Positions 11,079-30,772 of a stretch of 64,000 nt of DNA are shown in pieces. The stretch spans positions 186,001 through 250,000 of the IMG/VR virus record IMGVR_UViG_3300042350_004528. One strand, given 5' to 3'. The notes beneath the pieces were generated by a model that worked only from the letters and a program-made list of their open reading frames with translations, had not been told where the DNA came from and ran no database searches. A program made the translations under genes and the position numbers. Within the stretch, counting starts at the first letter, position 1. Each line of letters opens with the position of its first letter.

Positions 11079-11129
11079 AGGTTTGTTTTTGATGATGCAA
11101 ATATAAGTGCAATAAATTTAACTCGCAAG

Positions 11130-11369
11130 TTAAACTTCGATTTCACCACTTTTTATTTTCTCGTCAATCAGTTGTTCATACTCGGTTTGTATTTCCTTTG
11201 AACACTGGCTAACTTGGATCGCGACAAACTCACCATGAGGTAAACCCTCAAGTGCGTCATCAACGCTTCCCGCAAAAAACAATTTGTTATCGGACTTCCA
11301 ACGCAAGGGTTGGTCTGTTCCTCTTTCAAACACCAAATAGGTGTTTTCCTTTTTGTATATGTTGTTCAT
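11130..11369 (-). CDS. Hypothetical protein, 79 aa
   Basis: ORF track. Confidence 0.75.
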   Translation of the reverse strand: MNNIYKKENTYLVFERGTDQPLRWKSDNKLFFAGSVDDALEGLPHGEFVAIQVSQCSKEIQTEYEQLIDEKIKSGEIEV

Positions 11370-11547
11370 ACGCTTGGCGTTCTTCTTTGATTTTTATGAG
11401 AGTATTCAACTTGTTCTTTGCACATTCAATCGCTTCTTTCTTCGCACCCTTGTATTCAATAACCCACATTAAGTTTGCTTCTTCTTGGTGAAAGTTATTT
11501 GAACTCAAATTTCGCAACCAATAGTCATAGTTTGAATACATACTCAT
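11326..11547 (-). CDS. Hypothetical protein, 73 aa
   Basis: ORF track. Confidence 0.7.
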   Translation of the reverse strand: MSMYSNYDYWLRNLSSNNFHQEEANLMWVIEYKGAKKEAIECAKNKLNTLIKIKEERQAYEQHIQKGKHLFGV

Positions 11548-11551
11548 AGCG

Positions 11552-11668
11552 TTATAGTTTAGTTAATATACGAAAGATAAGGGCAATAAAATGTAGTGTT
11601 ATTACCAACACTCCAAATATCACAACAAAGTAATAAAAGTAATCGTGTGCTGTCCTTTTCAATTTCAT
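11552..11668 (-). CDS. 38-aa membrane peptide
   Basis: MKLKRTAHDYFYYFVVIFGVLVITLHFIALIFRILTKL; ATG 4 nt after -7 box. Confidence 0.65.
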   Translation of the reverse strand: MKLKRTAHDYFYYFVVIFGVLVITLHFIALIFRILTKL

Positions 11669-11705
11669 AATACAAAGATAAGTGAATTAAATTTAATGTG
11701 CAAAT

Positions 11706-11954
11706 TTACAAGTGAGTAACATGCCCACAATTTAAGCATTCAATATAAGGTTTTCCACCTTGTGCAACAATAACACTTTCTTTGGGAAACAACCACCATT
11801 CATTCTCGCCACATTGTTCACATTCTGCATTCTCACTCCCCATTCTCTCGGTCATTGTCATTTGTCCCTTTCCTTTCAAATGTGGGTACACCAGGTCAAG
11901 TACATTTCCATTCACTTCTTGAAGGACTGCTTGATAAAATTTCGGTTTGCTCAT
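11706..11954 (-). CDS. Zn-ribbon protein, 82 aa
   Basis: CEQC..CLNC. Confidence 0.8.
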   Translation of the reverse strand: MSKPKFYQAVLQEVNGNVLDLVYPHLKGKGQMTMTERMGSENAECEQCGENEWWLFPKESVIVAQGGKPYIECLNCGHVTHL

Positions 11955-12054
11955 ACTCGTTTTGTTTTTGATAGTTCAAAGATAAGTGAATTAAATTTAA
12001 TATGCAAATAAAAAGGGGACTTTCGCCCCCTTTTTTTACCCACAGTTTTATGGT

Positions 12055-12711
12055 TTAATCATCACTATCACTATACTCGTAAACCTCACAATCAACATAC
12101 AACTTCACATACAACTTGCCCTCTTGTTCAACAACCTCTAAACCATTCTCGCCCTCATCTTCTGCCGTATTGTAGTTTACGCTATCATCAGTAATTTCGC
12201 CCTTGTGTTCGGGTGTCCAATCGTTTGCACAATCTTGGAAACTTTCGTGCAACTGCTCAATCATTTGTTCGTTTTCTTCGGTAAGAATGAAATCCTTTTT
12301 GTAGTCAGTATTCTTTCCGTTCCAATTAGTGTGCGACATACCACCAATGTATTCAGTTAGAAAGTCGGCTTGTTCCTTTGTAACCTCACAAAGTACATTA
12401 CCACTATACCTTTCGCACCACTCCGATTGAGCCGATTTTGAGTAAGTGAAATCATCTTCTTCATCACTCAATTCAATACGGACAATACCACTTTCGCCCA
12501 TATAGTGTCCGTCAGACGCTTCATAAAACTGAACTTGGTTGTAAACCTCATTGTCAAAGTAGTCAGTTAAACCACTTTCATCATTCACAATCTCGCCCTT
12601 TTTATCGTGGAACAAAAGGTTTGTGTCATTCATACTATCGCCACCACAACTGAAATGAAATTCAGCGAAAGCGATTTTTTGGGCTTTCCATTTTTCAATA
12701 ATTTCTTGCAT
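12055..12711 (-). CDS. DUF6878-like acidic protein, 218 aa
   Basis: FSCGGDS motif; adjacent to DUF6915-like gene. Confidence 0.6.
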   Translation of the reverse strand: MQEIIEKWKAQKIAFAEFHFSCGGDSMNDTNLLFHDKKGEIVNDESGLTDYFDNEVYNQVQFYEASDGHYMGESGIVRIELSDEEDDFTYSKSAQSEWCERYSGNVLCEVTKEQADFLTEYIGGMSHTNWNGKNTDYKKDFILTEENEQMIEQLHESFQDCANDWTPEHKGEITDDSVNYNTAEDEGENGLEVVEQEGKLYVKLYVDCEVYEYSDSDD

Positions 12712-12754
12712 ATCGTTTTTGTTTTTGATTGGTACAAAGATAAATGAAATAAAT

Positions 12755-13171
12755 TTAACTTGCAAGTTCTTCGTTCTCTTTTCTTAATTTATCCAAGAAA
12801 ACATTTGCAGTTTCAATACTTTCGGGGTTGTCCACCAACTTAACCCCATTGTGTATCCAATCGGGCAAATCAAAGTGTTTAAGATAGTCCTGTGCAGTCG
12901 GCACAAACTTCATACGGAAATCTTCCAAGATATGCAACATAGCAATATCAATCGTGTCTACACTTCTACCACTTGAATTGGTTATATTGTAACCAAACAC
13001 CTTTGGAATGATTGTGTAAGCAAACCAAGTATTGTGTGTTAATACCCTTGCTGAATTGTTGTTCATAGTCGCTTTCGGACTATCAATAAGTTCGTGGATA
13101 GCCAAGTAATCTTCCACTTTACCACCCCAACGCTTAACGCTGGACTTTGAATGAATTAACGGATTAGCCAT
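12755..13171 (-). CDS. DUF6915-like protein
   Basis: MANPLIHSKSSVKRWGGKVEDYLAIH..HILED. Confidence 0.72.
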   Translation of the reverse strand: MANPLIHSKSSVKRWGGKVEDYLAIHELIDSPKATMNNNSARVLTHNTWFAYTIIPKVFGYNITNSSGRSVDTIDIAMLHILEDFRMKFVPTAQDYLKHFDLPDWIHNGVKLVDNPESIETANVFLDKLRKENEELAS

Positions 13172-13294
13172 ATTGTTTTGTTTTTTGATATTGCAAATGT
13201 AAGTGTAATAAATTTAACTCGCAAATTTTAACACAAAAAAAGGGGGAAATTTCTTTCCACCCTCTTTTCTTTATCAAATAAACAAACAAAATCC

Positions 13295-13564
13295 TCAATC
13301 CCAAATTCGTGTAACTTGTTGGCTGAATGGGTTGTACTCAACTTGTTTACCCATTTTCCAATCCCCTTTGTCCACTAACAAGGTTTTGTGTTCGTTACTC
13401 CACGCACCATTCGGTTTTTCGTGTTTCAGTTCACTATCCTCTTTGACAAGGACTTCGGGGAAATCGGTTTTCTCTTGCAAGTCCATAGCGAAATTGCCAT
13501 AGAGTGTGTGTTGGTTTGTTCCCTCGCCCACCAACAAAGTGTGCTTTGTTAAACTCTTTTTCAT
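13295..13564 (-). CDS. Small His-containing protein of the type that partners DUF6745-like proteins, 89 aa
   Basis: GEGTNQH..LKHE..EH..QVEYNP..RIWD. Confidence 0.65.
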   Translation of the reverse strand: MKKSLTKHTLLVGEGTNQHTLYGNFAMDLQEKTDFPEVLVKEDSELKHEKPNGAWSNEHKTLLVDKGDWKMGKQVEYNPFSQQVTRIWD

Positions 13565-13626
13565 ATCATTTATGTTTTTGATTGGTACAAAGATAAGTAT
13601 AATTTTTTTAATGTGCAAGTATTTTT

Positions 13627-14304
13627 TTAACTTTCTGCAACAAGTAATGTTTTGTACTCTTTCTCGGTCAAGTGTCTTGCACTACCCAAAGATTGGTATT
13701 TACCCTTTGGTTTAATCATAATACAATCCCCTTGTCGGATAATCTTCTCAATCTTACCCATTGGAATATCGGTTTGGATAGTCCACGCAATACATTGTAT
13801 AGCGTTTACTTTCTTTTTGTCAAACTTCCACATATCCCCCAAATCGTTTGTGCGATATACGGACTGCAAATCAACCCAAATAAGATATTCTCTATCGGTG
13901 CTTGTATCTTTGCAACGGACATAATGACAACTTTCCATACCCCTACCATTCAACCCCTCGTTAAAATAACTACCCTCAACCTCGTACAATTCATAAGTAT
14001 CGTTAAACTTGTGTTCAACCAATTTACCATTGGTATCAACCCAAGTGGTTGATTTTTTGAGTGTTTTTTTGGATAACAATTTTGGGTTTACATCAGCGAC
14101 AATTTTGTCCAAACCCAAATGTAAAACACCAATTCGCCTTTGTTCAAGGTTGTTTAATCGTGCAATCTCATTGAAAGACAAGGGAACAATATCGTTCCAA
14201 AAATCTTCAAGTTGTTCCATTGGACAATCCTCTTTGTGTTTCAGTTTTAGAACACGACACCCCAAGTCAAAGGGGAACTCTACATTGTTGATTACTAATT
14301 TCAT
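13627..14304 (-). CDS. DUF6745-like protein, 225 aa
   Basis: NLEQRR, CKDTSTDREY, IAWT, RQGD motifs. Confidence 0.55.
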   Translation of the reverse strand: MKLVINNVEFPFDLGCRVLKLKHKEDCPMEQLEDFWNDIVPLSFNEIARLNNLEQRRIGVLHLGLDKIVADVNPKLLSKKTLKKSTTWVDTNGKLVEHKFNDTYELYEVEGSYFNEGLNGRGMESCHYVRCKDTSTDREYLIWVDLQSVYRTNDLGDMWKFDKKKVNAIQCIAWTIQTDIPMGKIEKIIRQGDCIMIKPKGKYQSLGSARHLTEKEYKTLLVAES

Positions 14305-14452
14305 ATTGTTTCGTTTTTGATAGTGCAAATGTAAGTGTAATAAATTTAACTTGCAAGTATTCACAAAAAATAATTTGAAATACTTTTCTTTTCTCTGGCA
14401 ATCAAGTTAAAAAGAAAAAGGGGACTTTCGCCCCCTTATCTTGTTCATACTT

Positions 14453-15280
14453 TTAGTTATTCCAACAAGCGTTGAAAAATTCAAGGTAATCTTCTTTGCG
14501 ACCATAGGTTTTTCCGTTAAAGTCGCGTTTCTTCATACCCCTTTTAATACATTCAATAAACTTGTTTTGGCTCTTGTAGTATTTCTCAACTCCCAAGTTA
14601 CCCATAAAGTTAATCAACCCCGTTGTCGCATATTGACTGCGAACAAACCCCGTTGCATTGTAGAAGAAATCAATCGCATTGATACGCTTAATTGCTTCTT
14701 GCATATCAACAACTTTGAAACTCCCGTTTATGATTTGCTTCTTTGCCAAAGCGGTGGTTGAATTTGTGAGCAAAGCGGCAATCGTTGTGTGGGTGAGAGA
14801 GAAATCCTCCGTTAATTGACTAATAACTTTTACATCTTTGTTGAAATCCGACCAACCACAAATAAAGTCGGATATACCCCAATTACGAGAACTGCTATTT
14901 AATTTCGTTACAACAATCAACGCTTCCTTTTCGTCTTTCACCTCAATAAGTTTGCAACGAATAGGTAATTCAACACCCTTTAAGGCGGTGGTTAAATGTT
15001 GTCCATCAGCCACATTGTAAGACATACCGATTTTAACAACAACCACATCACGAAGAACTGCACCTAATTGTGTAACGCTTGAAGCCATTTTTTGGACATG
15101 AGAAGGTGATACTTTTCGGTTAAACTTTAATAGTTTTAACAACTCATAATTAGTTGTTTCAACAATCGCAGGGTAACAAATTACATTACCATTCACATCA
15201 TACTCAATCGTTTCTTTGAGTAAGGTTTTGAACGCAAAATTCCTTGAATTTTTACGCCCGATTTTCTCTGTTTTTTTCAT
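14453..15280 (-). CDS. ParB/Srx-like N-terminal domain protein, 275 aa
   Basis: FNRKV..HV and VADGQH (canonical DGQHR; R replaced by L). Confidence 0.7.
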   Translation of the reverse strand: MKKTEKIGRKNSRNFAFKTLLKETIEYDVNGNVICYPAIVETTNYELLKLLKFNRKVSPSHVQKMASSVTQLGAVLRDVVVVKIGMSYNVADGQHLTTALKGVELPIRCKLIEVKDEKEALIVVTKLNSSSRNWGISDFICGWSDFNKDVKVISQLTEDFSLTHTTIAALLTNSTTALAKKQIINGSFKVVDMQEAIKRINAIDFFYNATGFVRSQYATTGLINFMGNLGVEKYYKSQNKFIECIKRGMKKRDFNGKTYGRKEDYLEFFNACWNN

Positions 15281-15452
15281 AAAGAATTATTTTTTGTTTT
15301 TGATTGGTGCAAATATGAGTGTAATTTTTTTAACTCGCAAATTTTATCACAAAAAAATTTAAAAAACTTTTCAAACCTGGTGGATCCATAAAAAGAAAGG
15401 GGCAATGTTTCCACCGCCCCCTATTGTTGTAATCAAAAAACGCAACAATATA

Positions 15453-16058
15453 TTATTCTGTAAGGTCAAAAATGAACTCTGTATATCCTTTCGGTATTCT
15501 ATTTCCAACCGAAATTGAATGACGAGCCCAAACTCCAACCTGCCCTCTTTCATCCCCTCTAAAATCTCCACCGCCTCGCCCGTTGCCCTCGCAAGTTAGC
15601 AAAGGTAAAGGGTGAATTGTGAACGGCCACTTTTTCCCGTTCTTATCTTCCCAATAATCGCTAACGGGTACTTTTGTTTTATCAACATACTGCTTTTTGG
15701 TATGGTTGATAATGTACTGATACCTTGAACGATTAACACGGGTAGGTGCGAGCTCGTTATCATCATCGCAAAGGTCGTAAAGATTAACCTCTCTAACTTT
15801 CCCCTCTTCGTCTTGGTGAGTTAAACCTTTTTCCCCGTCTGCATAATCACCAGCCCAAACTACACGGGCTTTGTTAAACTTTCCTCTCGGTGATAACAAC
15901 TTTTCAAAAGTGTTCACAAAATCGTTACGCATCCACGAGTGCTCCATAAGTTTGAGCCCGTTGTTGTACTTGTGTGAATACATCCACCCTAAGACCGTTT
16001 CTTTTTCATCATCGCCCGTCTTTTCAGCGAGAATACAAGGTTTGTAATACTGTCCCAT
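15453..16058 (-). CDS. Phage hypothetical protein, 201 aa
   Basis: MGQYY, GLKLMEHSW, HPLPLLTCEGNGRGGGD. Confidence 0.85.
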   Translation of the reverse strand: MGQYYKPCILAEKTGDDEKETVLGWMYSHKYNNGLKLMEHSWMRNDFVNTFEKLLSPRGKFNKARVVWAGDYADGEKGLTHQDEEGKVREVNLYDLCDDDNELAPTRVNRSRYQYIINHTKKQYVDKTKVPVSDYWEDKNGKKWPFTIHPLPLLTCEGNGRGGGDFRGDERGQVGVWARHSISVGNRIPKGYTEFIFDLTE

Positions 16059-16113
16059 ATCTGTTTTGATTTATGAATACAAAGGTAAGTGTAATTTTTT
16101 TAATGTGCAAATT

Positions 16114-16278
16114 TTAATTCAATAATTTTATCCAACCTTGTGAGTGTGCTTCATTTATAAGATACTCATCACTAACACTATTATAGTTCTCATCACCTTG
16201 GGAACGCAAAAACTCTACCATTGCTTCATCACCTTTATAGGTAATCCCTGTGTTATTGTCTATCCAAATGTTCATCAT
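16114..16278 (-). CDS. Hypothetical protein, 54 aa
   Basis: Manual translation MMNIWIDN..; ATGA overlap with upstream stop. Confidence 0.65.
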   Translation of the reverse strand: MMNIWIDNNTGITYKGDEAMVEFLRSQGDENYNSVSDEYLINEAHSQGWIKLLN

Positions 16279-16508
16279 TGCCACCCTTGTTTTATTATTA
16301 CATTTTTTTTACCCTGTTTAATCCAGTGTTCAAACCATTCGCCCCATTCACCTCTCCTGTGTCGGTAAACGCAAATGTATTCATCAAAACTATCGTTCAT
16401 AAATGCATTCATACGCTTCTTAACTTCTGCGTATGTATTCACCCTCAAAGAAACATCTTTTCCTTGTTGGTTTCTATAACTCACCGAAGGTTTAAATGCT
16501 TTTGCCAT
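16275..16508 (-). CDS. Hypothetical protein, 77 aa
   Basis: RRGEWGEWFEHW motif. Confidence 0.82.
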   Translation of the reverse strand: MAKAFKPSVSYRNQQGKDVSLRVNTYAEVKKRMNAFMNDSFDEYICVYRHRRGEWGEWFEHWIKQGKKNVIIKQGWQ

Positions 16509-16509
16509 A

Positions 16510-16860
16510 TTACTTCCACAAATTTTCGTAAGACATCAATGAAGCGGTAATCCTTTCAATAAACAAATCACCCCACTCAACATCACTCATCGTTCCGATA
16601 CCCTTTTGGTTTTTGTAATCTTTCAAATCATTGTTCATTTCAAACAAAATAGTTTTACAAGCAATTAACCTTTCGGGTATTTCAAAATCGGTGCTTTCGT
16701 TACTCTCTCTGCGATAATACTCCGCAATGTTGATAACCTCATCAACCAATTGTTCATCGGACATCTTCGCATACTTAACCATATCTTGCGGTGTTTCGAT
16801 TTCATCCCCCGCCATATCCACAATGGCGTCTATTAGTTTTTCTCTCATTGTTTGTTTCAT
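16510..16860 (-). CDS. Hypothetical protein, 116 aa
   Basis: Leaderless-type start. Confidence 0.8.
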   Translation of the reverse strand: MKQTMREKLIDAIVDMAGDEIETPQDMVKYAKMSDEQLVDEVINIAEYYRRESNESTDFEIPERLIACKTILFEMNNDLKDYKNQKGIGTMSDVEWGDLFIERITASLMSYENLWK

Positions 16861-16953
16861 AGTACAAAGATAAGTGTAATAAATTTAATGTGCAAATTTT
16901 TTTACAAAAAAAAGGGATAATTTCTTATCCCCTTTGTATTCAATCGTTACGGA

Positions 16954-17469
16954 TTAATAAGCGTATTCAACTTCCCAACCCGCATTTGTTTTCTTCTTCT
17001 GCAAGAAAGGTTTAAGGTCTTTAATGAACTTCTTTTCCGCCTCGCTATCAAAGAATGAACCCAAAGCACTCTTAACCACTTCAAGTATCGGTGTGTTGGT
17101 TGTTGTATCAGCGAATGTGCAATACAAATCAGCACTCCAATCTTTTGGTATTGAGCCGTGTTCTTGGTGTGATACCTTTGCTTTCTTCAAACCTCTCTCA
17201 ATACGAACAATCGGTGTTTCGTAAATGTCGGTCATATCATCGTACCAATCAATTTCGCTGAATGATACTGACATTGACAACAACTTTTTGGTCTTGATTG
17301 ACTTCCAAAAGTTTTCAACTTCCTCAGCAATTCGTTTCTCGTTCACATACAACTGCGACTTGCGTGATGAACCCGAATAGTCCGAACTGATACATAAACG
17401 GATTTTGTTTTCATTCAATCGGTTCACGCTAACCGAAAGCGACTCCTTGGTGAAAAGATTTTTTATCAT
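16954..17469 (-). CDS. Hypothetical protein, 171 aa
   Basis: Start corrected to MIKNL. Confidence 0.82.
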   Translation of the reverse strand: MIKNLFTKESLSVSVNRLNENKIRLCISSDYSGSSRKSQLYVNEKRIAEEVENFWKSIKTKKLLSMSVSFSEIDWYDDMTDIYETPIVRIERGLKKAKVSHQEHGSIPKDWSADLYCTFADTTTNTPILEVVKSALGSFFDSEAEKKFIKDLKPFLQKKKTNAGWEVEYAY

Positions 17470-17575
17470 ATCTTGTTTTGTTTTTGTTGATGCAAAGATA
17501 AGTACAATAAATTTAATGTGCAAATTTTAAGATAAAAAAAAGGGGAATTTCTTCCCCTTTCTTTTCAATGTTTTA

Positions 17576-17908
17576 TTACTCAACCACTTCTTCTTCTTTT
17601 GTTTCAATGTTGCTGAACAACTCTCCGATGTCGTGTGTGATTGCATTCACATAATGTGATGCATCAAAATCGGCATCATCAATCTCAATCTCGTTTCCGT
17701 TGGTAATTCGGAATGTAGTGCGGTATCCACTGATTTCAATATCACTTGGATCCGCTTCCTCAACGATCGCGATAACTCTTTCGCGTAACTCGTTAAGGTC
17801 TACCGAACTTTCACCCTCAACCTTGTTAATAAGATTGATGACATCTTCCTTTGTGAACAATGAACCTGCGGACTCGTTCACTAACTTAATAACTTCATTT
17901 TTTTTCAT
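17576..17908 (-). CDS. Acidic hypothetical protein, 110 aa
   Basis: Start corrected to MKKNE. Confidence 0.82.
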   Translation of the reverse strand: MKKNEVIKLVNESAGSLFTKEDVINLINKVEGESSVDLNELRERVIAIVEEADPSDIEISGYRTTFRITNGNEIEIDDADFDASHYVNAITHDIGELFSNIETKEEEVVE

Positions 17909-17969
17909 AGGTATTATATGTTTTTGATTATGATACAAATATAAGTGCAATAAATTTAATGTGCAAATT

Positions 17970-18440
17970 TTAACCCAAAAACTTTGGGTTTAATTTGAAC
18001 TCCAATTTGTATGTAGGGTTATAGCGACCACCCGAACAAAAACCGCAAGAAGATGTATTGCGTGTTGCTCTATGTTTCTTATGAGTATGACCACAACCCG
18101 AACAAACTGCAATATAGCGTGATTCGGGCGTTGTAACACTCTTACCACTATAACATCTATCGCCTGAGCAACCAATTTCTTGTGCTTTGGCTTTCCATAC
18201 TCTATCGTGGTGATGACCTGGTGTGAGGGCGTGTGCAATCTCGTGTAGGATTGTATTTCTAACTTCTTTTTCATCGTTCAAATGTGTTAAATACTTTGAT
18301 AATGTAATTACCTTTGCTCGGTACTTGCAACAACCAAATCTGCGTCTTGCGTTGTCAAAGGTGAAACGCCAACCTTGTTGTTTGATACCATGCTTTTGCA
18401 TGAGTTCGTTTGCGAGTGTTTGTGCTTTGTATAAGTCCAT
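17970..18440 (-). CDS. SprT-like zinc metalloprotease
   Basis: HEIAH, H..W, C-terminal CSGC..CGFC ribbon. Confidence 0.88.
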   Translation of the reverse strand: MDLYKAQTLANELMQKHGIKQQGWRFTFDNARRRFGCCKYRAKVITLSKYLTHLNDEKEVRNTILHEIAHALTPGHHHDRVWKAKAQEIGCSGDRCYSGKSVTTPESRYIAVCSGCGHTHKKHRATRNTSSCGFCSGGRYNPTYKLEFKLNPKFLG

Positions 18441-18460
18441 TGCTTTGTTTTTTGATGATG

Positions 18461-18557
18461 CAAATATAAGTGTGATAAATTTAACTTGCAAATTTTACTG
18501 TAAAAAAAATTTTTTTGTAAAAAAGTTTGCGGGTTAAAAATATTGTATGTACATTTG
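18461..18557. promoter_or_regulatory. Back-to-back array promoters at the main strand switch
   Basis: - promoter ~18461-18492 and + promoter 18526-18557. Confidence 0.85.
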
Positions 18558-18785
18558 TATTACAAAACAATTAAAATGGATTTAAATCAAAAATCATCAG
18601 CAGACCACATTATCGAACATCTATTAGCTATTGATGTGGATGGGGAAACAATGGAATATATCATCAATGGGGTTTGTATGGATGAACAGGTATTCAGACA
18701 ATTATTTCTTAAAGCATCGCTCTCGCAAATTAATCAGTTGATGGATGTAAAAAAGTTTGCGGGTTAAAAATATTGTATGTACATT
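18516..18785 (+). repeat. Exact 40-bp direct repeat (18516-18555 and 18746-18785) flanking one gene
   Basis: TGTAAAAAAGTTTGCGGGTTAAAAATATTGTATGTACATT twice. Confidence 0.95.
18576..18767 (+). CDS. Hypothetical protein, 63 aa
   Basis: Start corrected to MDLNQ; ends KFAG in next promoter. Confidence 0.78.
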   Translation: MDLNQKSSADHIIEHLLAIDVDGETMEYIINGVCMDEQVFRQLFLKASLSQINQLMDVKKFAG

Positions 18786-18791
18786 CGCAAC

Positions 18792-19091
18792 ATGAAAACA
18801 AAAGACATAAACACGAGTATCGGTCTGTCAATCTATAAAGGTGATTGGGACGGGGCTGAATGGACGATAACGGGCTTTCCCAAAGCCGAGGTCATCGGAC
18901 ATAAATATGAAAGTGCATACGATTTCGAAGAAGCCGTTAAACGCAATGTGAATTGTAGCGGTATTAAGTTTGATAGTGAGATGTGCCAGTTCTTTGCATA
19001 CGCCAAAACCAAAGCAAGGTTGGTTAGTTTCGCGAAGCAAATTGAGAAGCACTACGCTAAAGCGAATGAGTTGAAAGAAAAAATGTTTTAA
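18792..19091 (+). CDS. Hypothetical protein, 99 aa
   Basis: Start corrected to MKTKD. Confidence 0.82.
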   Translation: MKTKDINTSIGLSIYKGDWDGAEWTITGFPKAEVIGHKYESAYDFEEAVKRNVNCSGIKFDSEMCQFFAYAKTKARLVSFAKQIEKHYAKANELKEKMF

Positions 19092-19144
19092 TACTTGCAC
19101 ATTAAATTTATTTCATTTACATTTGCCTCCAAATCAAAAACGCA

Positions 19145-19360
19145 ATGGAAGATATTATTAAAATCAACAAGTTGGAACTCGCAAGTGAGTTAGCCAACGA
19201 AGCCACAAAGGATGAGATGTTCTCAAAGGGTCTTATCGTGGATGAGGATGAAATGTATCGTGAGGACAATGGTTGCTCAATCTATACAGAGGAAGCACAA
19301 GACATCTTCAACGATTACTACGATTATTTCTTAACCAAGATTGAGGAGGTTGCGATATGA
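19145..19360 (+). CDS. Acidic hypothetical protein, 71 aa
   Basis: YTEEAQDIFNDYYD. Confidence 0.8.
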   Translation: MEDIIKINKLELASELANEATKDEMFSKGLIVDEDEMYREDNGCSIYTEEAQDIFNDYYDYFLTKIEEVAI

Positions 19361-19551
19361 GTAAGGTAGCAAAACTGGTTACAATATCCCTGATGACAAG
19401 AGTCATCGTGGATGAGAATGCAAGTGAGGAAGAGATTTTGAATTCTGCCAGACCTAAATTCATTCAGAAGGTTCAGGAAGAACTGAATGAAAACATCGAG
19501 GAAATTTGGTACGACAATGAATGTCCCTACGACCCTGAATTCGACAATTAA
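19357..19551 (+). CDS. Hypothetical protein, 64 aa
   Basis: ATGA-coupled. Confidence 0.78.
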   Translation: MSKVAKLVTISLMTRVIVDENASEEEILNSARPKFIQKVQEELNENIEEIWYDNECPYDPEFDN

Positions 19552-19605
19552 AATCTTTTTGTATTCAAATTTGCACATTAAAAAAATTATACTTATCTTT
19601 GCTGT

Positions 19606-19926
19606 ATGGAAAAATCAATGAGAACAGCGGCTGTATGTTCAAACTACGCCCTGAAAATAAAAGAAGCCCTTGTTCAAATGGCTGTTGAGGATAAACTCCC
19701 AATGGATATGACCACTTTGAATACGGATGAATTCGAAAACATTCTCGAACCGCTTGTTCGCAAGGTTGTCCGTGACGAGGACGAGAATGCAATCCCTGAG
19801 AGCATTCAGGTTGGTGTTTACTACTATGAGGATGATGAAACAGGGAAGCCTGTGTTTGATACTGATAGTATGATGGATGAATTCGAAAATGAGTTGAAAA
19901 AACTTGAAGACAAGTTTGCGAGTTAA
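19606..19926 (+). CDS. Acidic hypothetical protein, 106 aa
   Basis: Leaderless-type start; ends KFAS. Confidence 0.8.
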   Translation: MEKSMRTAAVCSNYALKIKEALVQMAVEDKLPMDMTTLNTDEFENILEPLVRKVVRDEDENAIPESIQVGVYYYEDDETGKPVFDTDSMMDEFENELKKLEDKFAS

Positions 19927-19955
19927 ATTAAATTCACTTATATTTGCATAACACA

Positions 19956-20258
19956 ATGACAAACTATACTGATTTCAATGAAGAGGTTGGCAAGATTCGG
20001 GTGAGGCTAGCCCAACAAACCGAAGCTTTACTTAAGCCCGCGATTCCGCCAGCCATTTACAACTGCAAGAACGAAGGCATTGCCATATCGACAGCAGAAG
20101 GTACGATGAAAGTTGAAACCATTGGTTACGACAACGGCGGAGTATTCGTTAAAACCGAAACAGGTGAGGTATGGGATTACATGGATTTGGACACTGATGA
20201 TATGGTCGCGATTTACGAGCATGTTTGGTACCAAATTAATTCCGCACCTATGAGGTGA
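19956..20258 (+). CDS. Hypothetical protein, 100 aa
   Basis: Start corrected to MTNYT. Confidence 0.8.
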   Translation: MTNYTDFNEEVGKIRVRLAQQTEALLKPAIPPAIYNCKNEGIAISTAEGTMKVETIGYDNGGVFVKTETGEVWDYMDLDTDDMVAIYEHVWYQINSAPMR

Positions 20259-20405
20259 GTCTTTGTGTGATGTTTTGTTTTGATGATGAAGAGGAGACCT
20301 AGTGTCTCCTTTTCTGATTATACCAGGATCAACAGCAAAAAAAGTTGATTTCAGATTTGCACATTAAATTTAATTCATTTATATTTGCATTCAAAACAAA
20401 ACGAA

Positions 20406-20621
20406 ATGGCTAAACCAAAATTTTACGAGTGTGTGATTTCATTTACATACGAAGCGGAGAACCCAACAGACGCCGCGAGGCAGTTTATCGCAAACATTCA
20501 GAACAATCCAAACTGGAATGTACTGGTGAAAGATTGTGAGAACTTTGAGAACACCTTTAATGTTGATACGGAAACAGGTGAGTGTGAAACCAATTCAATC
20601 GAGGATTATGACGACCTGTAA
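20406..20621 (+). CDS. Hypothetical protein, 71 aa
   Basis: Start corrected to MAKPKFY. Confidence 0.8.
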   Translation: MAKPKFYECVISFTYEAENPTDAARQFIANIQNNPNWNVLVKDCENFENTFNVDTETGECETNSIEDYDDL

Positions 20622-20820
20622 AGCCCTGACAGCACATATTGTTGAAGAAGGAAACCTGATCGACAGGTGGCCCTGTGATGTTAACGAAGAGAATGAGATG
20701 CAATCAAACGGGTCTCAGGAATTTCTTTATGAATATAACGGGAACAAGTACTGTGTCTGGATGGACTGGAACGACAATCCAATCCTACCTGGTGAAATTT
20801 TATCACCAATTCCTGAATAA
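20608..20820 (+). CDS. Hypothetical protein, 70 aa
   Basis: Start corrected to MTTCK. Confidence 0.7.
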   Translation: MTTCKALTAHIVEEGNLIDRWPCDVNEENEMQSNGSQEFLYEYNGNKYCVWMDWNDNPILPGEILSPIPE

Positions 20821-20875
20821 AATTTGCAGGTTAAAAAAATTATACTTATATTTGCATCATTAAATCAAAACAAAT

Positions 20876-21160
20876 ATGTCAAAGCCCACAGCAAAAGAAA
20901 CGGTAGAAACCGTAACCAATTACCTGAACAGTTTCTCGAGCAAAGAGAAGGAATTCATTGAGGAAATGAACAGGGAACATCGCACACTTCAACAGTCATT
21001 CACAAAACTATGTCTGGCATGGCTTGAGAACTGCGCCAATGAAGAATATCGTTTTGATGGAAGGAATGAAGCGAGTCACACTGTATCGAAGGAACTCGTT
21101 GAGAACTTCAAGTGGAACAAGGATGGTTTCAAACCATCTGAATTCTTACCCTGTATATAA
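20876..21160 (+). CDS. Hypothetical protein, 94 aa
   Basis: EHRTLQQSF..DGRNEAS. Confidence 0.85.
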   Translation: MSKPTAKETVETVTNYLNSFSSKEKEFIEEMNREHRTLQQSFTKLCLAWLENCANEEYRFDGRNEASHTVSKELVENFKWNKDGFKPSEFLPCI

Positions 21161-21193
21161 AAAAAAGAGGGGACTTTTACATCCCCTCATTTT

Positions 21194-21364
21194 TTATTGT
21201 ACCGAGTCTGTGGTTGTGGAAACATTCGTAGTGTCTACGCTTGTGGTATCGGTAACAACAGCGGTTGAGTCCGTAGCTGTTGTTGACTCGGTGGATTCCG
21301 ATCCGCAAGATACAACTGTCAACATTGAAGCGACAATTGCAAGTGTCATGAGAATTCTTTTCAT
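21194..21364 (-). CDS. Short Thr/Ser/Asp-rich lipoprotein, 56 aa
   Basis: Lipobox VVSC; four D-(S/T)-(T/V) sequons. Confidence 0.8.
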   Translation of the reverse strand: MKRILMTLAIVASMLTVVSCGSESTESTTATDSTAVVTDTTSVDTTNVSTTTDSVQ

Positions 21365-21470
21365 GTCCACAATATTAAACAAAAAATAGATAAATGTCAA
21401 GCAAATTAGACAAAAAAAAATTTGCAGGTTAAAAAAATTACATTTACATTTGTATTCAAAATCAAAAGCA

Positions 21471-21815
21471 ATGAAATATAAACAGCAAGCTCCAATTGAT
21501 GATTGGTCAGACATCGACAAGTGCATCAAGAATTCTGAAATCAACCTGAAACATTTACAGGACATTGACAAAGCTCAGGAAGCCAAAGGTGAACCCTTAC
21601 TTTACCGTTACTTTTACAGGCCTGTCGCTGACGGTCGAGCTTGGTATCAGGTGACGAAGGTTACATCTAGAACAGCTACCGTCACATGGTGCGCAGGGAT
21701 TTGTCTTGACGACTATGTTGATATGATGTTGGGTGAGGAAGCTACGATATCTCGCGGCATGATTGAGAACATGGTGAATGGAAGAATTGCACTTGAAAAA
21801 TTATTTGCACATTAA
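21471..21815 (+). CDS. Hypothetical protein, 114 aa
   Basis: PVADGRAWYQV; ends LFAH. Confidence 0.83.
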   Translation: MKYKQQAPIDDWSDIDKCIKNSEINLKHLQDIDKAQEAKGEPLLYRYFYRPVADGRAWYQVTKVTSRTATVTWCAGICLDDYVDMMLGEEATISRGMIENMVNGRIALEKLFAH

Positions 21816-21860
21816 ATTTTTTCCATTTATATTTGTATTCATAAATCAAAAACAAAATAT

Positions 21861-22484
21861 ATGCACAAAGGAGTAATCTTATTAGTAAAAGCGGATGACC
21901 GCGATGACGCCATTGGCCAAGCCAACGAGTTTCTTGACCACTATGGGGATGGCGATGTATGGGATTGGTTCGTAATCGGTGGCCGTTGGAGCGGTAACCT
22001 GAACACCCTATCGAAAACTTTCTACGAGAAAGCAAAGGTTCTTTTCGAACAAGCATATCCAAATGAGGATAGCCCATTCTTGTCAACCAAAATGGTTGAG
22101 GAGCAAGCACAGGGTTTGCAAGAGATTTGGGAAAGCATTGGCGGGAAAGGTCAGAACCCATATTCTCGCAGCAGTTATATCAGTGACGGATTTGAGGATG
22201 ATTGTCTCCCGTTGACTGATTGCATTCCCGTCATTCAGGATTGGAAGAAAGATATGGTGGCGGAGGCTGAAACCATTTGGAATAAAATGATTGAGGCCAA
22301 GAAAGATAGTGCGGACAAGTACGATATGTCAGGGTACTACGCAGGTATCTATCGTGACTTAAAGTATGATAATTTCTCTTTCGAGAGTAATGTCTACGAT
22401 GTCGTCAATCACACGAACGACCCCTCGCAGGCTTTGGAGAACCCCGAGCAGTGGTGGGCGGTTCAAATTGATATGCACAATTAA
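21861..22484 (+). CDS. Phage hypothetical protein, 207 aa
   Basis: WDWFVIGGRWSG..IDMHN. Confidence 0.87.
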   Translation: MHKGVILLVKADDRDDAIGQANEFLDHYGDGDVWDWFVIGGRWSGNLNTLSKTFYEKAKVLFEQAYPNEDSPFLSTKMVEEQAQGLQEIWESIGGKGQNPYSRSSYISDGFEDDCLPLTDCIPVIQDWKKDMVAEAETIWNKMIEAKKDSADKYDMSGYYAGIYRDLKYDNFSFESNVYDVVNHTNDPSQALENPEQWWAVQIDMHN

Positions 22485-22572
22485 TATTCCTCTTATCATT
22501 CCACAAAGGGGAGGTTTTTAAAATCTCCCTTTTTTTTTATCACATTTGTAAAATCAATTAATAACAGAGCAT

Positions 22573-22680
22573 ATGTCTAAGTCAGTAAAAGTAAAAATCA
22601 CGAAGAGTACATTCAAGTATGTAAGCAAACCAACAACTAAACAGGGCCGTGTGCCAAAACCCTCATCCAAAAAAAGATAG
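22573..22680 (+). CDS. 35-aa Lys-rich peptide
   Basis: MSKSVKVKITKSTFKYVSKPTTKQGRVPKPSSKKR. Confidence 0.55.
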   Translation: MSKSVKVKITKSTFKYVSKPTTKQGRVPKPSSKKR

Positions 22681-22740
22681 ATTCACATTTGCAAGTTAAA
22701 AAAATTATACTTATCTTTGTCCCAATCAAAACAAAATAAT

Positions 22741-22995
22741 ATGGAACTTTTAGTTGGAACCAACCTTGAGGTTATGAGTAGGACAATTTACATCGCCGTT
22801 GATGTACAATTTGACAAGAACGGTGAAACCTACGAGGCTAATCTCACCTGTTGTTTATCGGAAGATATAAACATTGGATTTGATTCCTGGGATATCACAA
22901 TTGCAAACGAGGAAGAACTTCCTGAGTTAACGGCGGAAGAAACTGAGCAACTTAAAGAATTTGCAAAAAAATATGCCCAAGTACTTGCAAATTAA
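22741..22995 (+). CDS. Hypothetical protein, 84 aa
   Basis: Start corrected to MELLV; ends VLAN. Confidence 0.8.
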   Translation: MELLVGTNLEVMSRTIYIAVDVQFDKNGETYEANLTCCLSEDINIGFDSWDITIANEEELPELTAEETEQLKEFAKKYAQVLAN

Positions 22996-23034
22996 ATTTA
23001 TTACACTTATATTTGTAACCTAAATCAAAACAAT

Positions 23035-23649
23035 ATGTCAAAAGTATTCAAAGTAACTTCAGGTACAATGGTGTGTTCCGACCCTTGTTACGAAATCCCG
23101 ACTTGGTGTCAGGGTATCGTGAGTAATGTGAAAAACGGAAATTGGGAAGCGGGTATTGAAACTTCCGATGAAGGCTCTTGGGGTGAGCGTATCGCTCGTC
23201 TTTGGGTTTACAACTTGGAAGCGGCTATCAAAGACCCAAGTATAGTTAAAGCCATTGAGAATGGTGGTGGACACGAAATGCCTTTCAGTGCGGGTGTTGA
23301 TAGTGGTCAGTTCGGTTTCTTCGACCACGCCAACTATCGCAAAGATGATAGTGCGAAAGATTTACCACAATACGACTTCGGTGGTGACTTTGGAATGGGT
23401 ACTAACGAGGGTGATGCTTGGTATGGTGCTTGTTGTCATTTAACACTTGGTGAAGAAAATTGGGGTGTCCTACCAAATGGTGTTGTTTCTTCTTCAGGAT
23501 ATGGTGATGGCTCTTATGCAGTCACAGGTATCAAGAACGATGAGGGTGAGTATGTTGCGTTCTGCATTGTCTTTATCGGTAACGATGATGAGGAGGATAA
23601 CGATGATTTGGATTGGGGTGATTGGAACGAAACTACCGATGAGGATTAA
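23035..23649 (+). CDS. DUF4241-like protein
   Basis: SDPCY, GVDSGQ, SSGYGDGSY. Confidence 0.72.
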   Translation: MSKVFKVTSGTMVCSDPCYEIPTWCQGIVSNVKNGNWEAGIETSDEGSWGERIARLWVYNLEAAIKDPSIVKAIENGGGHEMPFSAGVDSGQFGFFDHANYRKDDSAKDLPQYDFGGDFGMGTNEGDAWYGACCHLTLGEENWGVLPNGVVSSSGYGDGSYAVTGIKNDEGEYVAFCIVFIGNDDEEDNDDLDWGDWNETTDED

Positions 23650-23763
23650 ATTGGGTTTTTAGGTTGGAGCCTCCTGATCAATTCAGGGGGCTTTTTTTTT
23701 CTTAAAAAATTTGCATATTAAATTTATTTCATTTATCTTTGCATTCATAAAATCAAAAACAAA

Positions 23764-24342
23764 ATGAATATTTTACCAAAATCAATTACTGACCGAGTGT
23801 CAATCAAGAATGTGAAAGAAAACTTCGGACACGACTTGGGTGGTTTCTTCTGCGACATCTACTTCGACAACAAGAAAGTAGGTTACCTGAACAATGATGG
23901 TTGGGGTGGTTGCCCTGACATTCGTACCTATGGTTTCGATGCAAAGCACAAAGCGATGATGAAATCATTTGAGGACTTCCTGACCGAGCAGAACTTCGCC
24001 CAGTTTGTTGCTGATGATTACAACAAACCGCACCCGCAAATGCCCAATGGTAAGAATGATTGGGTTGCTGATGATTTCAGGTTTGACAGCCAAGTTGAAT
24101 TCCTTTGTGAACGCCTGAACTTTATGAAAAGTATTGAACGCCAAACAAAGAAAGCAATCCTTTATGGTAACCCTCGTTCAACCAATTACAAGATAGTATC
24201 TTGGAAAGGTGCAAAGACACTTGAAGATGTTGTGAAGAGTATCGGTAATGCTCGTTTCAAGGTTGTTGTTGATGGTATCAAAGCCAAACTTGTTGAGGGG
24301 GAAATGATTTACAACACAAACCTCGAAAAGTTTTTGCAATAA
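23764..24342 (+). CDS. Hypothetical protein, 192 aa
   Basis: NDGWGG motif. Confidence 0.87.
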   Translation: MNILPKSITDRVSIKNVKENFGHDLGGFFCDIYFDNKKVGYLNNDGWGGCPDIRTYGFDAKHKAMMKSFEDFLTEQNFAQFVADDYNKPHPQMPNGKNDWVADDFRFDSQVEFLCERLNFMKSIERQTKKAILYGNPRSTNYKIVSWKGAKTLEDVVKSIGNARFKVVVDGIKAKLVEGEMIYNTNLEKFLQ

Positions 24343-24398
24343 AATTTGCACATTAAATTTATTTCACTTATCTTTGTACCAACAAAATCAAAAAACAT

Positions 24399-25016
24399 AT
24401 GGGATATTCAACCGATTTCTTTGGCTCATTGTCTTTGAGCCGACCAGCGACCATCGTAGAGAAGAACTACTTGGATAAACTCGCTGACACTCGCAGAATG
24501 AAACGCGATGTTAACAAACTCATGGAACTCTACAAAGGGGAACATGGCAATCCATTTGCTAAAGACAAGAACAACCCTGACGATATCTATGGTTTCAAAG
24601 GGGAATACTTTGTTGGGGCAGATGGTTTCAAGGGTCAGAATGGCGATGATAGTGTTATCGACCACAACAGCGCCAGTGGCGAGATTGGATGGGGAGAATA
24701 CAAAGGCGATTGGGTTTTGCGTGATAAATTACAAACCGAACTCAACGCTGATAAAATCAAACAGCCAGGTCTTTGGTTGCAATGGGTGCTTAACGAGGAT
24801 GGTACTGAACTATCATGGGATGGTAACGAAAAGTTTTACCACTACACCGAATGGTTGCAGTATCTTATCGCCCATTTCTTTGAGCCATGGGGTATCAAAC
24901 TCAATGGCGAGATTGAATGGGTTGGCGAGGACAGCAATGACCGAGGAAAGATTGTTGTGTCCGACAACCATGTTGAAATTCTTGACGCTGTTATAGGATA
25001 TCAGAAGAGGGGTTAA
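24399..25016 (+). CDS. Phage hypothetical protein, 205 aa
   Basis: MGYSTDF, QPGLWLQW, WDGNEKFY. Confidence 0.87.
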   Translation: MGYSTDFFGSLSLSRPATIVEKNYLDKLADTRRMKRDVNKLMELYKGEHGNPFAKDKNNPDDIYGFKGEYFVGADGFKGQNGDDSVIDHNSASGEIGWGEYKGDWVLRDKLQTELNADKIKQPGLWLQWVLNEDGTELSWDGNEKFYHYTEWLQYLIAHFFEPWGIKLNGEIEWVGEDSNDRGKIVVSDNHVEILDAVIGYQKRG

Positions 25017-25123
25017 TCCCCTCTTTTCCTGAATTCTGGATCGGATCAAAAAAAAATGTAAAAAAGTTTGCGTATTAAATTTATTCCACTTATCTTTGTA
25101 TCATAATTAAAAACCAAAATAAA

Positions 25124-25936
25124 ATGTACGAACTCGAAAAAATCAAAGAACTTGCACCTGCGGCTTTCCGTATGCCTGAAGACGGTGCTCAGGACGGTGT
25201 GTCAAAGCACTACCAATTCATGACCACCGCTGAAATCATTGACGGTCTTGGTGGAATGGGTTGGGATGTTCACTCGGCTATGCAACAAAAGTCGAAGAAG
25301 AACCCTGAAACCACAAAGCACATGTTGCGCTTCCGTAATGACAACTACGGTTCACTGGGTGTTAAGGGGAATGTTCCTGAAATCCTGTTAGTGAATTCTC
25401 ACGACCGCACAACCTCATTGAACTTTCATGTGGGTATCTTCCGCATCATCTGTTCGAACGGCTTGGTGGTTGCTGATGAAACATTCAACAAGTTCCGTAT
25501 TCGTCACATGGGTACAACATTCGATGAGGTTAAGGGATTAATCAACAACATCACTGAGAACCTACCAACTGTGTTCAATACAATCAACCGCTTCGAGGGT
25601 GTGATTATGAGTGAGGAGGCACAAACCGAGTTCGCTATGCGAGCATTCGCTATCCGCTTCCCTGAGTACATCAACCCAAAGACAAACGCTTTGGACACCA
25701 AGAAAGTAATGAAGAATGTATCAGTTGATGAAATCCTGAAAGCAGTTCGTCCTGAGGACAATGGCCCTGACTTGTGGAGAGTTTACAACCGAGTTCAGGA
25801 GAAACTCATCAAGGGTGGCTTCCAACATCAAGGCGAGGGGCAGAAGCCTCGTGCTTCACGCCCTATCAGCAACATTCGTATGAATGTCCTGATTAACAAA
25901 GGCCTGTGGAACTTGGCGGAGGAGTTCGCTAACTAA
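25124..25936 (+). CDS. DUF932/DUF945 family protein
   Basis: KHMLRFR, NSHD, GIFRIICSNG, LWRVYNRVQE. Confidence 0.85.
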   Translation: MYELEKIKELAPAAFRMPEDGAQDGVSKHYQFMTTAEIIDGLGGMGWDVHSAMQQKSKKNPETTKHMLRFRNDNYGSLGVKGNVPEILLVNSHDRTTSLNFHVGIFRIICSNGLVVADETFNKFRIRHMGTTFDEVKGLINNITENLPTVFNTINRFEGVIMSEEAQTEFAMRAFAIRFPEYINPKTNALDTKKVMKNVSVDEILKAVRPEDNGPDLWRVYNRVQEKLIKGGFQHQGEGQKPRASRPISNIRMNVLINKGLWNLAEEFAN

Positions 25937-26037
25937 CTCACAATACACTTGAAAGAAAGGGGGAAGAAATTCCCTCTTTTTTTTTGCACATTAAATTTAA
26001 TTTACTTATCTTTGTTATCGAAATCAAAAACAATAAT

Positions 26038-26607: not shown

Positions 26608-26611
26608 TCTT

Positions 26612-30768: not shown

Positions 30769-30772
30769 ATTC

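What the first reader, a model, noticed from the sequence alone, without database searches (positions are those of the whole stretch)
18516..18785. Single gene flanked by an exact 40-bp promoter duplication (footprint of cassette insertion)
Seen: a rare promoter variant (GCGGGTTAAAAATATTGTATG) is duplicated exactly at 18516-18555 and 18746-18785 around a 63-aa gene whose stop lies inside the second copy. Inference: Campbell-type insertion of a promoter-bearing mini-circle or unequal crossover, so the 230-bp unit should be excisable.
Basis: partly seen in the sequence, partly recalled or inferred. Interest (0 to 1): 0.66.

Follow-up and report, generated by a model that had tools for sequence, protein, structure and literature searches.

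The report
Promoter-flanked gene cassette in a jumbo phage
A small accessory gene in the early-gene region of a 299-kb T4-like freshwater phage sits between two identical 40-bp copies of one promoter, and three metagenome assemblies hold otherwise matching phage sequence (100%, 99.8% and 99.7% identical to copies that carry the gene) that lacks exactly this gene plus one repeat; this fits the promoter-mediated gene shuffling already described for T4-type phages.

Summary
The 40-mers at 18516-18555 and 18746-18785 are identical. They are the only such pair in the 299-kb genome, and the next most similar of the 47 array promoters matches 32/40. Both are Bacteroidota-type promoters (-33 TTTG, -7 TAnnTTTG). 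They bracket a real 63-aa gene (X) from a widespread family of small phage proteins. Its stop lies inside copy 2 because a 29-nt deletion removed its native 3' end.

The predicted empty site exists. Three independent assemblies carry left flank, one 40-mer, then the downstream gene, in three strain backgrounds that each also occur with X. More distant relatives (SprT-like protein 81-92% identical) have one orthologous promoter and no X. A relative at about 96.7% identity has X with a full-length tail and a 46-nt repeat with 2 mismatches, so the duplication is older than this strain. The empty alleles are therefore most likely precise losses.

Two further cassette gain/loss or swap events in the same array also break inside promoters. 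The genome has a T4-type capsid and portal and no tyrosine or serine recombinase. This is a new member of the known PeSL-type "mobile regulatory cassette" phenomenon, using a different promoter type. Mini-circles and the origin of the duplication remain untested.

The parts
18516..18555 (+). Repeat copy 1 (R1): promoter of gene X. The -33 TTTG is at 18526-18529. The -7 box at 18550-18557 is completed to a perfect TAnnTTTG by the two bases after the repeat.
18576..18767 (+). Gene X, 63 aa. It is a small four-helix protein from a widespread phage family of unknown function. Family homology ends at about residue 58. The last 6 codons and the stop are read from repeat copy 2, after a 29-nt deletion that abuts position 18746.
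18746..18785 (+). Repeat copy 2 (R2): promoter of gene Y. The -33 is at 18756-18759. The -7 box at 18780-18787 has C instead of the near-invariant T at position -6. The ATG of Y follows 4 nt later, which predicts a leaderless mRNA.
   Evidence: -7 rule from PMC6847099
18792..19091 (+). Gene Y, 99 aa, unknown function. It lies directly behind the single promoter in the empty alleles and in distant relatives.
17970..18440 (-). SprT-like metalloprotease gene, the first gene of the leftward arm. Used as the anchor to find the locus in relatives.
18461..18492 (-). Promoter of the SprT-like gene. Together with R1 it marks the point where transcription diverges in the early-gene array.
16865..16896 (-). 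Single promoter at a place where the L078 clade has two promoter copies (22-nt exact shared core) flanking an extra 79-aa gene. A second promoter-bounded presence/absence cassette.
9556..9962 (-). Gene between two promoters (9931-9962 and 9556-9587) that is replaced by an unrelated gene in relative L080. Both breakpoints lie inside the promoters.
1..32021 (.). Hyperplastic early-gene array. It holds 47 promoters spaced about 0.2-1.5 kb apart, facing left up to 18492 and mostly right from 18526. Many are preceded by GGGG..CCCC hairpins followed by a T-run.

Best explanation
The window comes from a 299-kb T4-like jumbo phage of freshwater lakes. Its host is inferred to be a Bacteroidota bacterium. 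About 32 kb of the window is a hyperplastic early region in which nearly every small gene has its own copy of a conserved host-type promoter (-33 TTTG, -7 TAnnTTTG).

At the point where transcription diverges, the resident promoter of gene Y has been duplicated. One copy now drives an acquired accessory gene X and the other still drives Y. The two direct repeats are substrates for general homologous recombination, or for replication slippage, during phage replication. Either process removes X plus one repeat precisely and leaves a working promoter in front of Y. The reverse reaction, integration of an R-X circle or unequal exchange between co-infecting genomes, could put X back or move it between relatives. 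The outcome is a presence/absence polymorphism of X in natural populations.

Shown: the repeat, its promoter nature by motif, the gene family, the precise empty alleles, the single-promoter state in distant relatives, and other promoter-bounded events in the same array.

Inferred: the recombination mechanism, the direction of each event, promoter activity, and the host phylum.
For: Repeat and outlier status.

Promoter array: the motif occurs 56 times against 2.84 expected. The promoters are co-oriented with the genes and switch strand at 18.5 kb. Sigma-70-type sites are not enriched, at 79 against 63 expected.

X is a real gene: it has 98 homologues with a conserved N-terminal core.

Empty alleles:
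- L011 is 100.000% identical to the window over 4400+126 nt but lacks the 230 bp.
- L072 is 99.84% identical to the X-carrying contig L010.
- The post-gap piece of scaffold L089 runs from 40 nt of left flank through the repeat into Y, on an L074-like background at 99.74%.
- L011 ends 86 nt past the repeat (126-40), and the L089 piece starts with a 55-mer. This fits branch points of k=127 and k=55 assembly graphs, both larger than the 40-nt repeat.

The X-carrying state is found in 5 identical records, in the L010/L074 strains at 39/40, and in the L065 clade at 44/46 with a full-length X.

Ancestral single promoter plus leader plus Y: L020-L024 and L095.

Other promoter-bounded events.

T4-type capsid and portal. 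No tyrosine or serine recombinase.

Precedent: PMC2839356 and PMC4122927.
Against: No reads were examined. The three raw-read runs had zero coverage, and Logan contigs (k=31) break at the repeat. The empty alleles therefore rest on assembled contigs, each of which starts or ends within 90 nt of the repeat.

No circle or tandem junction was found in IMG/VR.

The origin of the duplication is unresolved. One 578-nt contig (L071) has promoter-X-Y with no second promoter. It can be read either as an intermediate or as a secondary loss.

The repeat pair itself lacks the stem-loop that defines PeSLs.

Promoter activity and the host are inferred from motifs only. No RecA/UvsX-type recombinase was detected with Pfam RecA, although T4 UvsX-type proteins may escape that model.
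Confidence: 0.75

Rival explanations
1. The empty alleles are the original state, and the X-carrying genomes arose from them by Campbell-type integration of a small circle carrying the 40-mer and X, repeatedly or followed by spread through recombination.
For: Empty alleles exist. Distant relatives lack X. PeSL mini-circles are documented in T4-type phages. The A/G difference at repeat position 16 sits in copy 1 in L010/L074 but in copy 2 in the L065 clade. Excision and re-integration at different crossover points would produce this, but so would two point mutations.
Against: The X-carrying state is shared by every strain background and by the 3.3%-diverged L065 clade. This is most simply explained by one old duplication. 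The empty alleles have a -7 box fused directly to the ATG of Y, unlike the leadered ancestral state in L020, L024 and L095, as expected for a product of repeat-by-repeat deletion. A circle yields an exact 40/40 repeat only if it already carries the identical 40-mer.
Confidence: 0.15
2. The empty-site contigs are assembly artefacts (collapse of the 40-bp repeat or chimeric reads), and X is fixed.
For: All three empty junctions lie within 90 nt of a contig or scaffold-piece end. Assemblies are visibly tangled here, with 100-N gaps in L085, L089 and L091. Logan depth for X (18) lies between the depths of the flanks (20.8 and 14.4) in one run.
Against: Collapse requires k of 40 or less. The ends of L011 and the L089 piece match k=127 and k=55 graph nodes, where only real k-mers spanning flank, repeat and Y can build the path. 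The three contigs come from three different assemblies, and their sequences are closest to three different strains. A filled-only sample would give no branch at this place.
Confidence: 0.07
3. The 40-mer is the site of a dedicated site-specific recombination or transposition system (integron-like cassette, or a 40-bp target-site duplication).
For: The unit boundaries are precise. The PeSL authors raised the idea of a helper recombinase.
Against: No tyrosine or serine recombinase is found in the 299-kb genome. The unit has no terminal inverted repeats. Repeat boundaries differ between lineages, 40 versus 46 nt. Other events in the array use different promoter copies or a 9-nt start-codon repeat.
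Confidence: 0.03

Closest known systems
PeSL (promoter-early stem-loop) mobile regulatory cassettes of T4-type phages (Arbiol et al. 2010, PMC2839356; Comeau et al. 2014, PMC4122927)
   Same: A T4-type genome (gp23 and gp20 hits). A hyperplastic region of small orphan early genes, each behind a repeated host-type early promoter. Many promoters are preceded by GGGG..CCCC hairpins with T-runs. Insertions, deletions and replacements between close relatives have breakpoints inside the promoter repeats. Recombination between flanking copies deletes a single ORF. No dedicated recombinase is present.
   Different: The promoter is the Bacteroidota -33/-7 type, not sigma-70-like. This particular pair has no stem-loop, and the upstream gene runs into copy 2. 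The repeat is an exact 40-mer of a rare variant (a local duplication) rather than two independent consensus copies. The evidence is metagenomic presence/absence, not PCR of mini-circles. About a fifth of the array promoters predict leaderless mRNAs.
Morons of lambdoid and other tailed phages (own knowledge: Juhala et al. 2000; Hendrix et al. 2000)
   Same: An extra accessory gene with its own promoter, inserted between two genes of a conserved backbone and present in some relatives only.
   Different: Morons usually carry their own promoter and terminator of foreign origin and are not flanked by a duplication of the resident promoter. Here the promoter is the resident one and there is no terminator.
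Integron gene cassettes
   Same: Single promoter-adjacent ORFs that are gained and lost as units, possibly through small circles. The PeSL authors draw the same analogy.
   Different: No integrase, no attC/attI sites, each cassette has its own promoter, and the recombination is homology-based.
Deletion between short direct repeats in T4 non-essential regions (Mosig et al. 1998 and Singer et al. 1982, as cited in PMC2839356)
   Same: Homology patches shorter than 50 bp are enough for the phage recombination and replication machinery to delete small non-essential ORFs.
   Different: Those were laboratory deletion mutants. Here the alleles coexist in natural lake populations.

Membership tests
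PeSL-type mobile regulatory cassette | Located in a hyperplastic region of small, non-conserved early ORFs of a T4-type phage genome | tested here: met
   Gp23 (E 1e-74) and T4 portal (E 1e-78) are in the same record. There are 47 promoters with small ORFs in window 1-32000. Several indels and replacements separate relatives at 95-99% identity.
PeSL-type mobile regulatory cassette | The repeated motif is a strong early promoter recognised by the host primary sigma factor | tested here: inconclusive
   The motif TTTG-N19-21-TAnnTTTG occurs 56 times against 2.84 expected, co-oriented with the ORFs. It matches the published Bacteroidota consensus. No transcription data exist. The sigma-70 consensus named in the PeSL definition is not enriched.
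PeSL-type mobile regulatory cassette | The promoter is combined with a stem-loop terminator in one composite motif | tested here: not met
   For this pair there is no terminator-like hairpin between 18576 and 18790, and the X reading frame runs into copy 2. Elsewhere in the array the composite is present: GGGG..CCCC hairpins with T-runs directly upstream of promoters, with 53 terminator-like sites against 13.8 expected.
PeSL-type mobile regulatory cassette | Indels or replacements between close relatives have their breakpoints inside the flanking motifs, leaving one (chimeric) motif | tested here: met
   The X unit: L011, L072 and L089. The extra 79-aa cassette in L078 against one chimeric promoter at 16865-16896, and the cassette swap at 9569-9917.
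PeSL-type mobile regulatory cassette | Formation of extrachromosomal mini-circles holding one motif plus the ORF | not testable with these tools
   The circle/tandem junction pattern gave 0 hits in IMG/VR. The raw-read runs had no coverage. Inverse PCR or read mining is needed.
Integron cassette or site-specific recombination module | A tyrosine or serine recombinase encoded with the array | tested here: not met
   PF00589 and PF00239 gave no match in the 298,833-bp record, while the controls were positive.
Transposable element with target-site duplication | Terminal inverted repeats and a transposase within the unit | tested here: not met
   The 190 bp between the repeats hold only the 63-codon X gene. 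No inverted repeat bounds the unit.

The most novel reading that the evidence does not exclude
Promoter-flanked single-gene cassettes may turn over in natural populations of a far-T4 jumbo phage of Bacteroidota through small circular intermediates that excise from and re-integrate at any of about 47 homologous promoters. Promoter-mediated cassette shuffling would then be a general, promoter-sequence-independent property of T4-like hyperplastic regions. The exchange of the A/G variant between the two repeat copies in different lineages would be the trace of excision and re-integration cycles.
Probability: 0.3. Interest if true: 0.6.

Novelty: new member of a known kind. Interest (0 to 1): 0.42.

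Why it matters
PeSL-mediated shuffling was described from pairwise comparisons of cultured T4-like phages of Proteobacteria and from PCR of mini-circles. Here the same architecture and the same kind of events appear in an uncultured 299-kb far-T4 phage that uses the very different Bacteroidota promoter.

Both alleles of one cassette are recovered from lake metagenomes on near-identical backgrounds. This supports the view that what drives accessory-gene turnover in large phages is a repeated early promoter as such, not a particular sequence.

It also offers a clean natural test locus. Four junctions (flank-R-X, X-R-Y, flank-R-Y, X-R-X) can simply be counted in reads. For annotation, it shows that the odd C-terminus of gene X and the imperfect -7 box in front of gene Y are by-products of this history.

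Tried and rejected
- Nucleotide searches of the INPHARED phage collection, near and distant modes, found nothing.
- Read laying: the three raw-read runs offered had no reads on the stretch. Logan contigs (k=31, shorter than the 40-nt repeat) break at both copies, at 17600-18545, 18526-18775 and 18756-19600. They say nothing about the polymorphism.
- The circle or tandem-duplication junction pattern gave 0 hits in IMG/VR.
- Function of X: no Pfam or PHROG family. The AlphaFold model is a four-helix bundle (pLDDT 82) with no significant PDB match. X has no paralogue in the genome.
- Y has only a sub-threshold Imm51 hit, not used.
- I tried to polarise the origin of the duplication from the short leaders (X leader against the ancestral Y leader; the L071 X-Y junction against the left edge of the repeat). 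The similarities are 14/20 nt and a 7-nt A-run. This is too short and AT-rich to decide, so the origin is left open.
- Gene conversion was considered as the reason for exact identity. It is not required: about 1.3 differences are expected since the L065 split, and 0, 1 and 2 are observed.
- Other X homologues (P0004, P0007, P0011) sit in unrelated phage contexts and did not help.
- SprT-like homologues P0101 and P0108 sit in rearranged contexts.

Full report
**1. The observation**

The two 40-mers at 18516-18555 and 18746-18785 are identical and 230 nt apart.
- No other copy exists in the window at up to 3 mismatches, and none is expected by chance.
- An exact-repeat scan of the whole 298,833-bp record finds only this pair for the variant.
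- The bases on either side differ, so the repeat is exactly 40 nt.
- The ORF between them runs from ATG 18576 to TAA 18765-18767 (63 codons), and the stop lies inside copy 2.

**2. What the repeat is**

The window is G000:C1:186001-250000 of an IMG/VR virus record.

The pattern TTTG-N19-21-TAnnTTTG occurs 56 times in the window against 2.84 expected. Forty-seven of these, in a fixed 20-nt spacing class, lie in window 1-32000.
- They face left up to 18492 and, with two exceptions, right from 18526, each in front of a small ORF.
- The GC and AT skews switch sign at the same point.
- This is the published -33/-7 promoter consensus of Bacteroidota. The -7 element has near-invariant T-12, A-11, T-8, T-7, T-6 and G-5, and transcription starts 4-5 nt downstream (PMC6847099).
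- Sigma-70-type sites are not enriched, at 79 against 63 expected.

In the register of the 40-mer, the 47 promoters are on average 28.9/40 identical (sd 3.5). Only two of 1081 pairs are 40/40, and the nearest other promoter to this variant is 32/40. The pair is therefore a duplicated rare variant and not two consensus copies.

The two copies differ in their -7 box:
- Copy 1 is completed by the next two bases to a perfect -7 box.
- Copy 2 has C at position -6. The ATG of the next gene (Y, 18792) follows 4 nt after the box, which predicts a leaderless mRNA.
- Nine of the 47 promoters share this 4-nt spacing.

No terminator-like hairpin lies between X and copy 2.

**3. The genes**
- *X* has 98 homologues at E of 0.01 or better. 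Most are about 72 aa, with a strongly conserved N-terminal core. It has no Pfam or PHROG family. A four-helix model (pLDDT 82) has no PDB fold match.
- Homology of the window's X to its family ends at about residue 58. The last six codons and the stop are read from the promoter.
- Compared with the closest relatives (L065/L078 clade, X 88% identical with a full-length tail), the window lineage has a 29-nt deletion directly abutting the left edge of copy 2. This shifts the frame into the promoter.
- *Y* (99 aa) has no assignable function.
- The leftward neighbour is a SprT-like metalloprotease.

**4. Relatives at this locus**

| State | Records | What is there |
|---|---|---|
| Same strain, with X | 4 other IMG/VR contigs | 100% identical over 10.5 kb, repeat 40/40 |
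| With X | L010, L074 strains (about 98.7% and 99.1%) | Repeat 39/40 (A instead of G at repeat position 16 of copy 1) |
| With X | L065-L070 clade (about 96.7%) | Full-length X; 46-nt repeat with 2 mismatches, reaching 4 nt further right. The A/G difference sits in copy 2 instead of copy 1. |
| Single promoter, X then Y | L071 (578-nt contig) | Promoter, full-length X, 7 nt, then Y; no second promoter |
| Single promoter, no X | L020-L024 (SprT-like 90-92% aa) and L095 (81%) | One orthologous promoter carrying the same GGGTTAAAAATATT signature (L095: GAGGTTAAATAAATT), a leader of about 11-27 nt, and Y |

The single-promoter state is therefore ancestral for the wider group. X was acquired in the clade that contains the window, and the duplication predates the split between the window lineage and the L065 clade. 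With about 3.3% divergence, roughly 1.3 differences between two 40-nt copies would be expected. The observed 0, 1 and 2 need no gene conversion.

**5. Empty-site alleles**

Three independent assemblies show left flank, one 40-mer, then Y:
- *L011* (IMG 3300034109, 4486 nt) has zero mismatches to the window over 4400+126 nt.
- *L072* (Ga0315907, 3162 nt) is 99.84% identical to the X-carrying L010.
- *The post-gap piece of scaffold L089* (ERZ4239550) is closest to the X-carrying L074 strain, at 99.74%.

Each ends or begins near the repeat, which at first suggests an artefact. The geometry argues otherwise.
- L011 stops 86 nt after the repeat (126-40).
- The L089 piece starts with a 55-mer that ends at the polymorphic position of the repeat.
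- These are node positions of k=127 and k=55 de Bruijn graphs (my inference). Both k values exceed 40.
- At such k, a path from flank through the repeat into Y needs real k-mers that span the empty junction.
- A break at those nodes is expected when both alleles are present in the sample.

I rate the empty alleles as real at about 85-90%. Every background also occurs with X, and the X-carrying state is shared with the diverged L065 clade. In addition, the empty alleles have the -7 box fused to the ATG of Y, unlike the leadered ancestral state. For these reasons the empty alleles are best read as precise losses by exchange or slippage between the repeats. They arose either recurrently or once, followed by recombination into other backgrounds.

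**6. Generality within the array**

Comparison with the L078/L080 contigs (95-97% identity over about 20 kb) shows two more events of this kind:
- An extra 79-aa gene flanked by two promoter copies (22-nt exact core) sits where the window has one chimeric promoter (16865-16896).
- The gene at 9569-9917 is replaced by an unrelated gene, with both breakpoints inside promoters.

Other observations in the array:
- Promoter motifs cover about 5% of the array, so breakpoints are clearly concentrated in them.
- Not all events use promoters. One extra gene in L010/L072/L074 is bounded by a 9-nt repeat around overlapping stop and start codons (window 19355-19363). L010 also has an illegitimate 300-nt deletion.
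- In the leftward arm many promoters are preceded by GGGG..CCCC hairpins with T-runs.

**7. Comparison with known systems**

The record encodes a T4-type major capsid protein and portal. The capsid protein is only 27-34% identical to those of KVP40, nt-1 and some huge phages. No tyrosine or serine recombinase was found.

The architecture and the events match the PeSL "mobile regulatory cassettes" of T4-type phages. In that system, composite terminator-promoter motifs flank orphan ORFs in hyperplastic regions, mediate insertions, deletions and swaps between close relatives, and yield mini-circles (PMC2839356, PMC4122927).

Differences here:
- The promoter type is different.
- This pair lacks a stem-loop.
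- The repeat is a local exact duplication.
- Mini-circles are untested.

I therefore file it as working like a PeSL cassette and as a new member of that kind. I do not file it as a sequence homologue.

**8. What remains open**

How the duplication arose is not resolved.
- A Campbell integration gives two identical 40-mers only if the circle already carried that 40-mer.
- L071 could be an intermediate (X inserted promoter-less behind the resident promoter, followed later by copying of the promoter in front of Y) or a secondary loss.
- The sequence similarities bearing on this are too short to decide.

No reads, no transcription data and no host are available.

**9. Verdict**

The mechanism is ordinary for T4-type phages but is documented here in a new lineage and directly in natural populations. 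Interest is moderate.

Noticed in passing
window 1-32021: Nine of the 47 array promoters, including copy 2 of the repeat, have an ATG exactly 4 nt after the -7 box. This predicts leaderless early mRNAs. Most Flavobacterium johnsoniae transcripts are reported as leadered (PMC6847099).
   Followed up: partly
window 1197-1418 (- strand): A 175-bp unit flanked by an exact 47-nt promoter repeat (1197 and 1372). It holds only a 21-codon hydrophobic micro-ORF (1283-1348, - strand), preceded by a GGGG..CCCC hairpin. A second mini-cassette of the same build.
   Followed up: partly
window 923-994 and 2402-2473 (third copy near 4166): A 72-nt exact repeat of promoter plus leader plus start codon, 1479 nt apart, with a 47-nt third copy. 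This is the only other 40/40 promoter pair in the array. Relatives covering this part were not available.
   Followed up: no
window 19355-19363: Relatives L010, L072 and L074 carry an extra gene of about 64 codons here. It is bounded by a 9-nt direct repeat around overlapping stop and start codons (ATATGAG..). This is gene gain or loss without a promoter.
   Followed up: partly
window 16117-16415 and 16508-16714: L010 lacks 300 nt, with the left breakpoint 5 nt upstream of the -33 of promoter 16080-16111 and the right breakpoint inside a gene. It also has about 27 unrelated nt in place of about 200 nt. These are further strain-level indels in the array.
   Followed up: no
window 44585-45610 (- strand): A short (341 aa) adenylosuccinate-synthetase-like protein. 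It scores below the curated cut-offs of both PurA (274 against 402 bits) and PurZ (123 against 300 bits) in NCBIfam, so whether it acts in a modified-base pathway is open.
   Followed up: partly
window 40759-42210, 46100-47962, 48288-50808, 62101-63483 (- strand): Auxiliary genes: a tyrosinase-domain protein, a Band_7/SPFH protein, a NAPRTase-family protein followed by a weak phosphoribosyltransferase hit, and an RNA ligase.
   Followed up: no
G000:C1:1-126 and 298689-298814 (outside the window): A 126-nt exact direct repeat lies between the start and near the end of the record, which IMG/VR classes as linear. It may reflect circular closure or terminal redundancy of the assembly.
   Followed up: no
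G000:C1:about 140000-154600 (outside the window): About 14 kb of highly repetitive coding sequence with hundreds of exact repeats of 25-117 nt, probably one or a few giant repeat-rich proteins.
   Followed up: no
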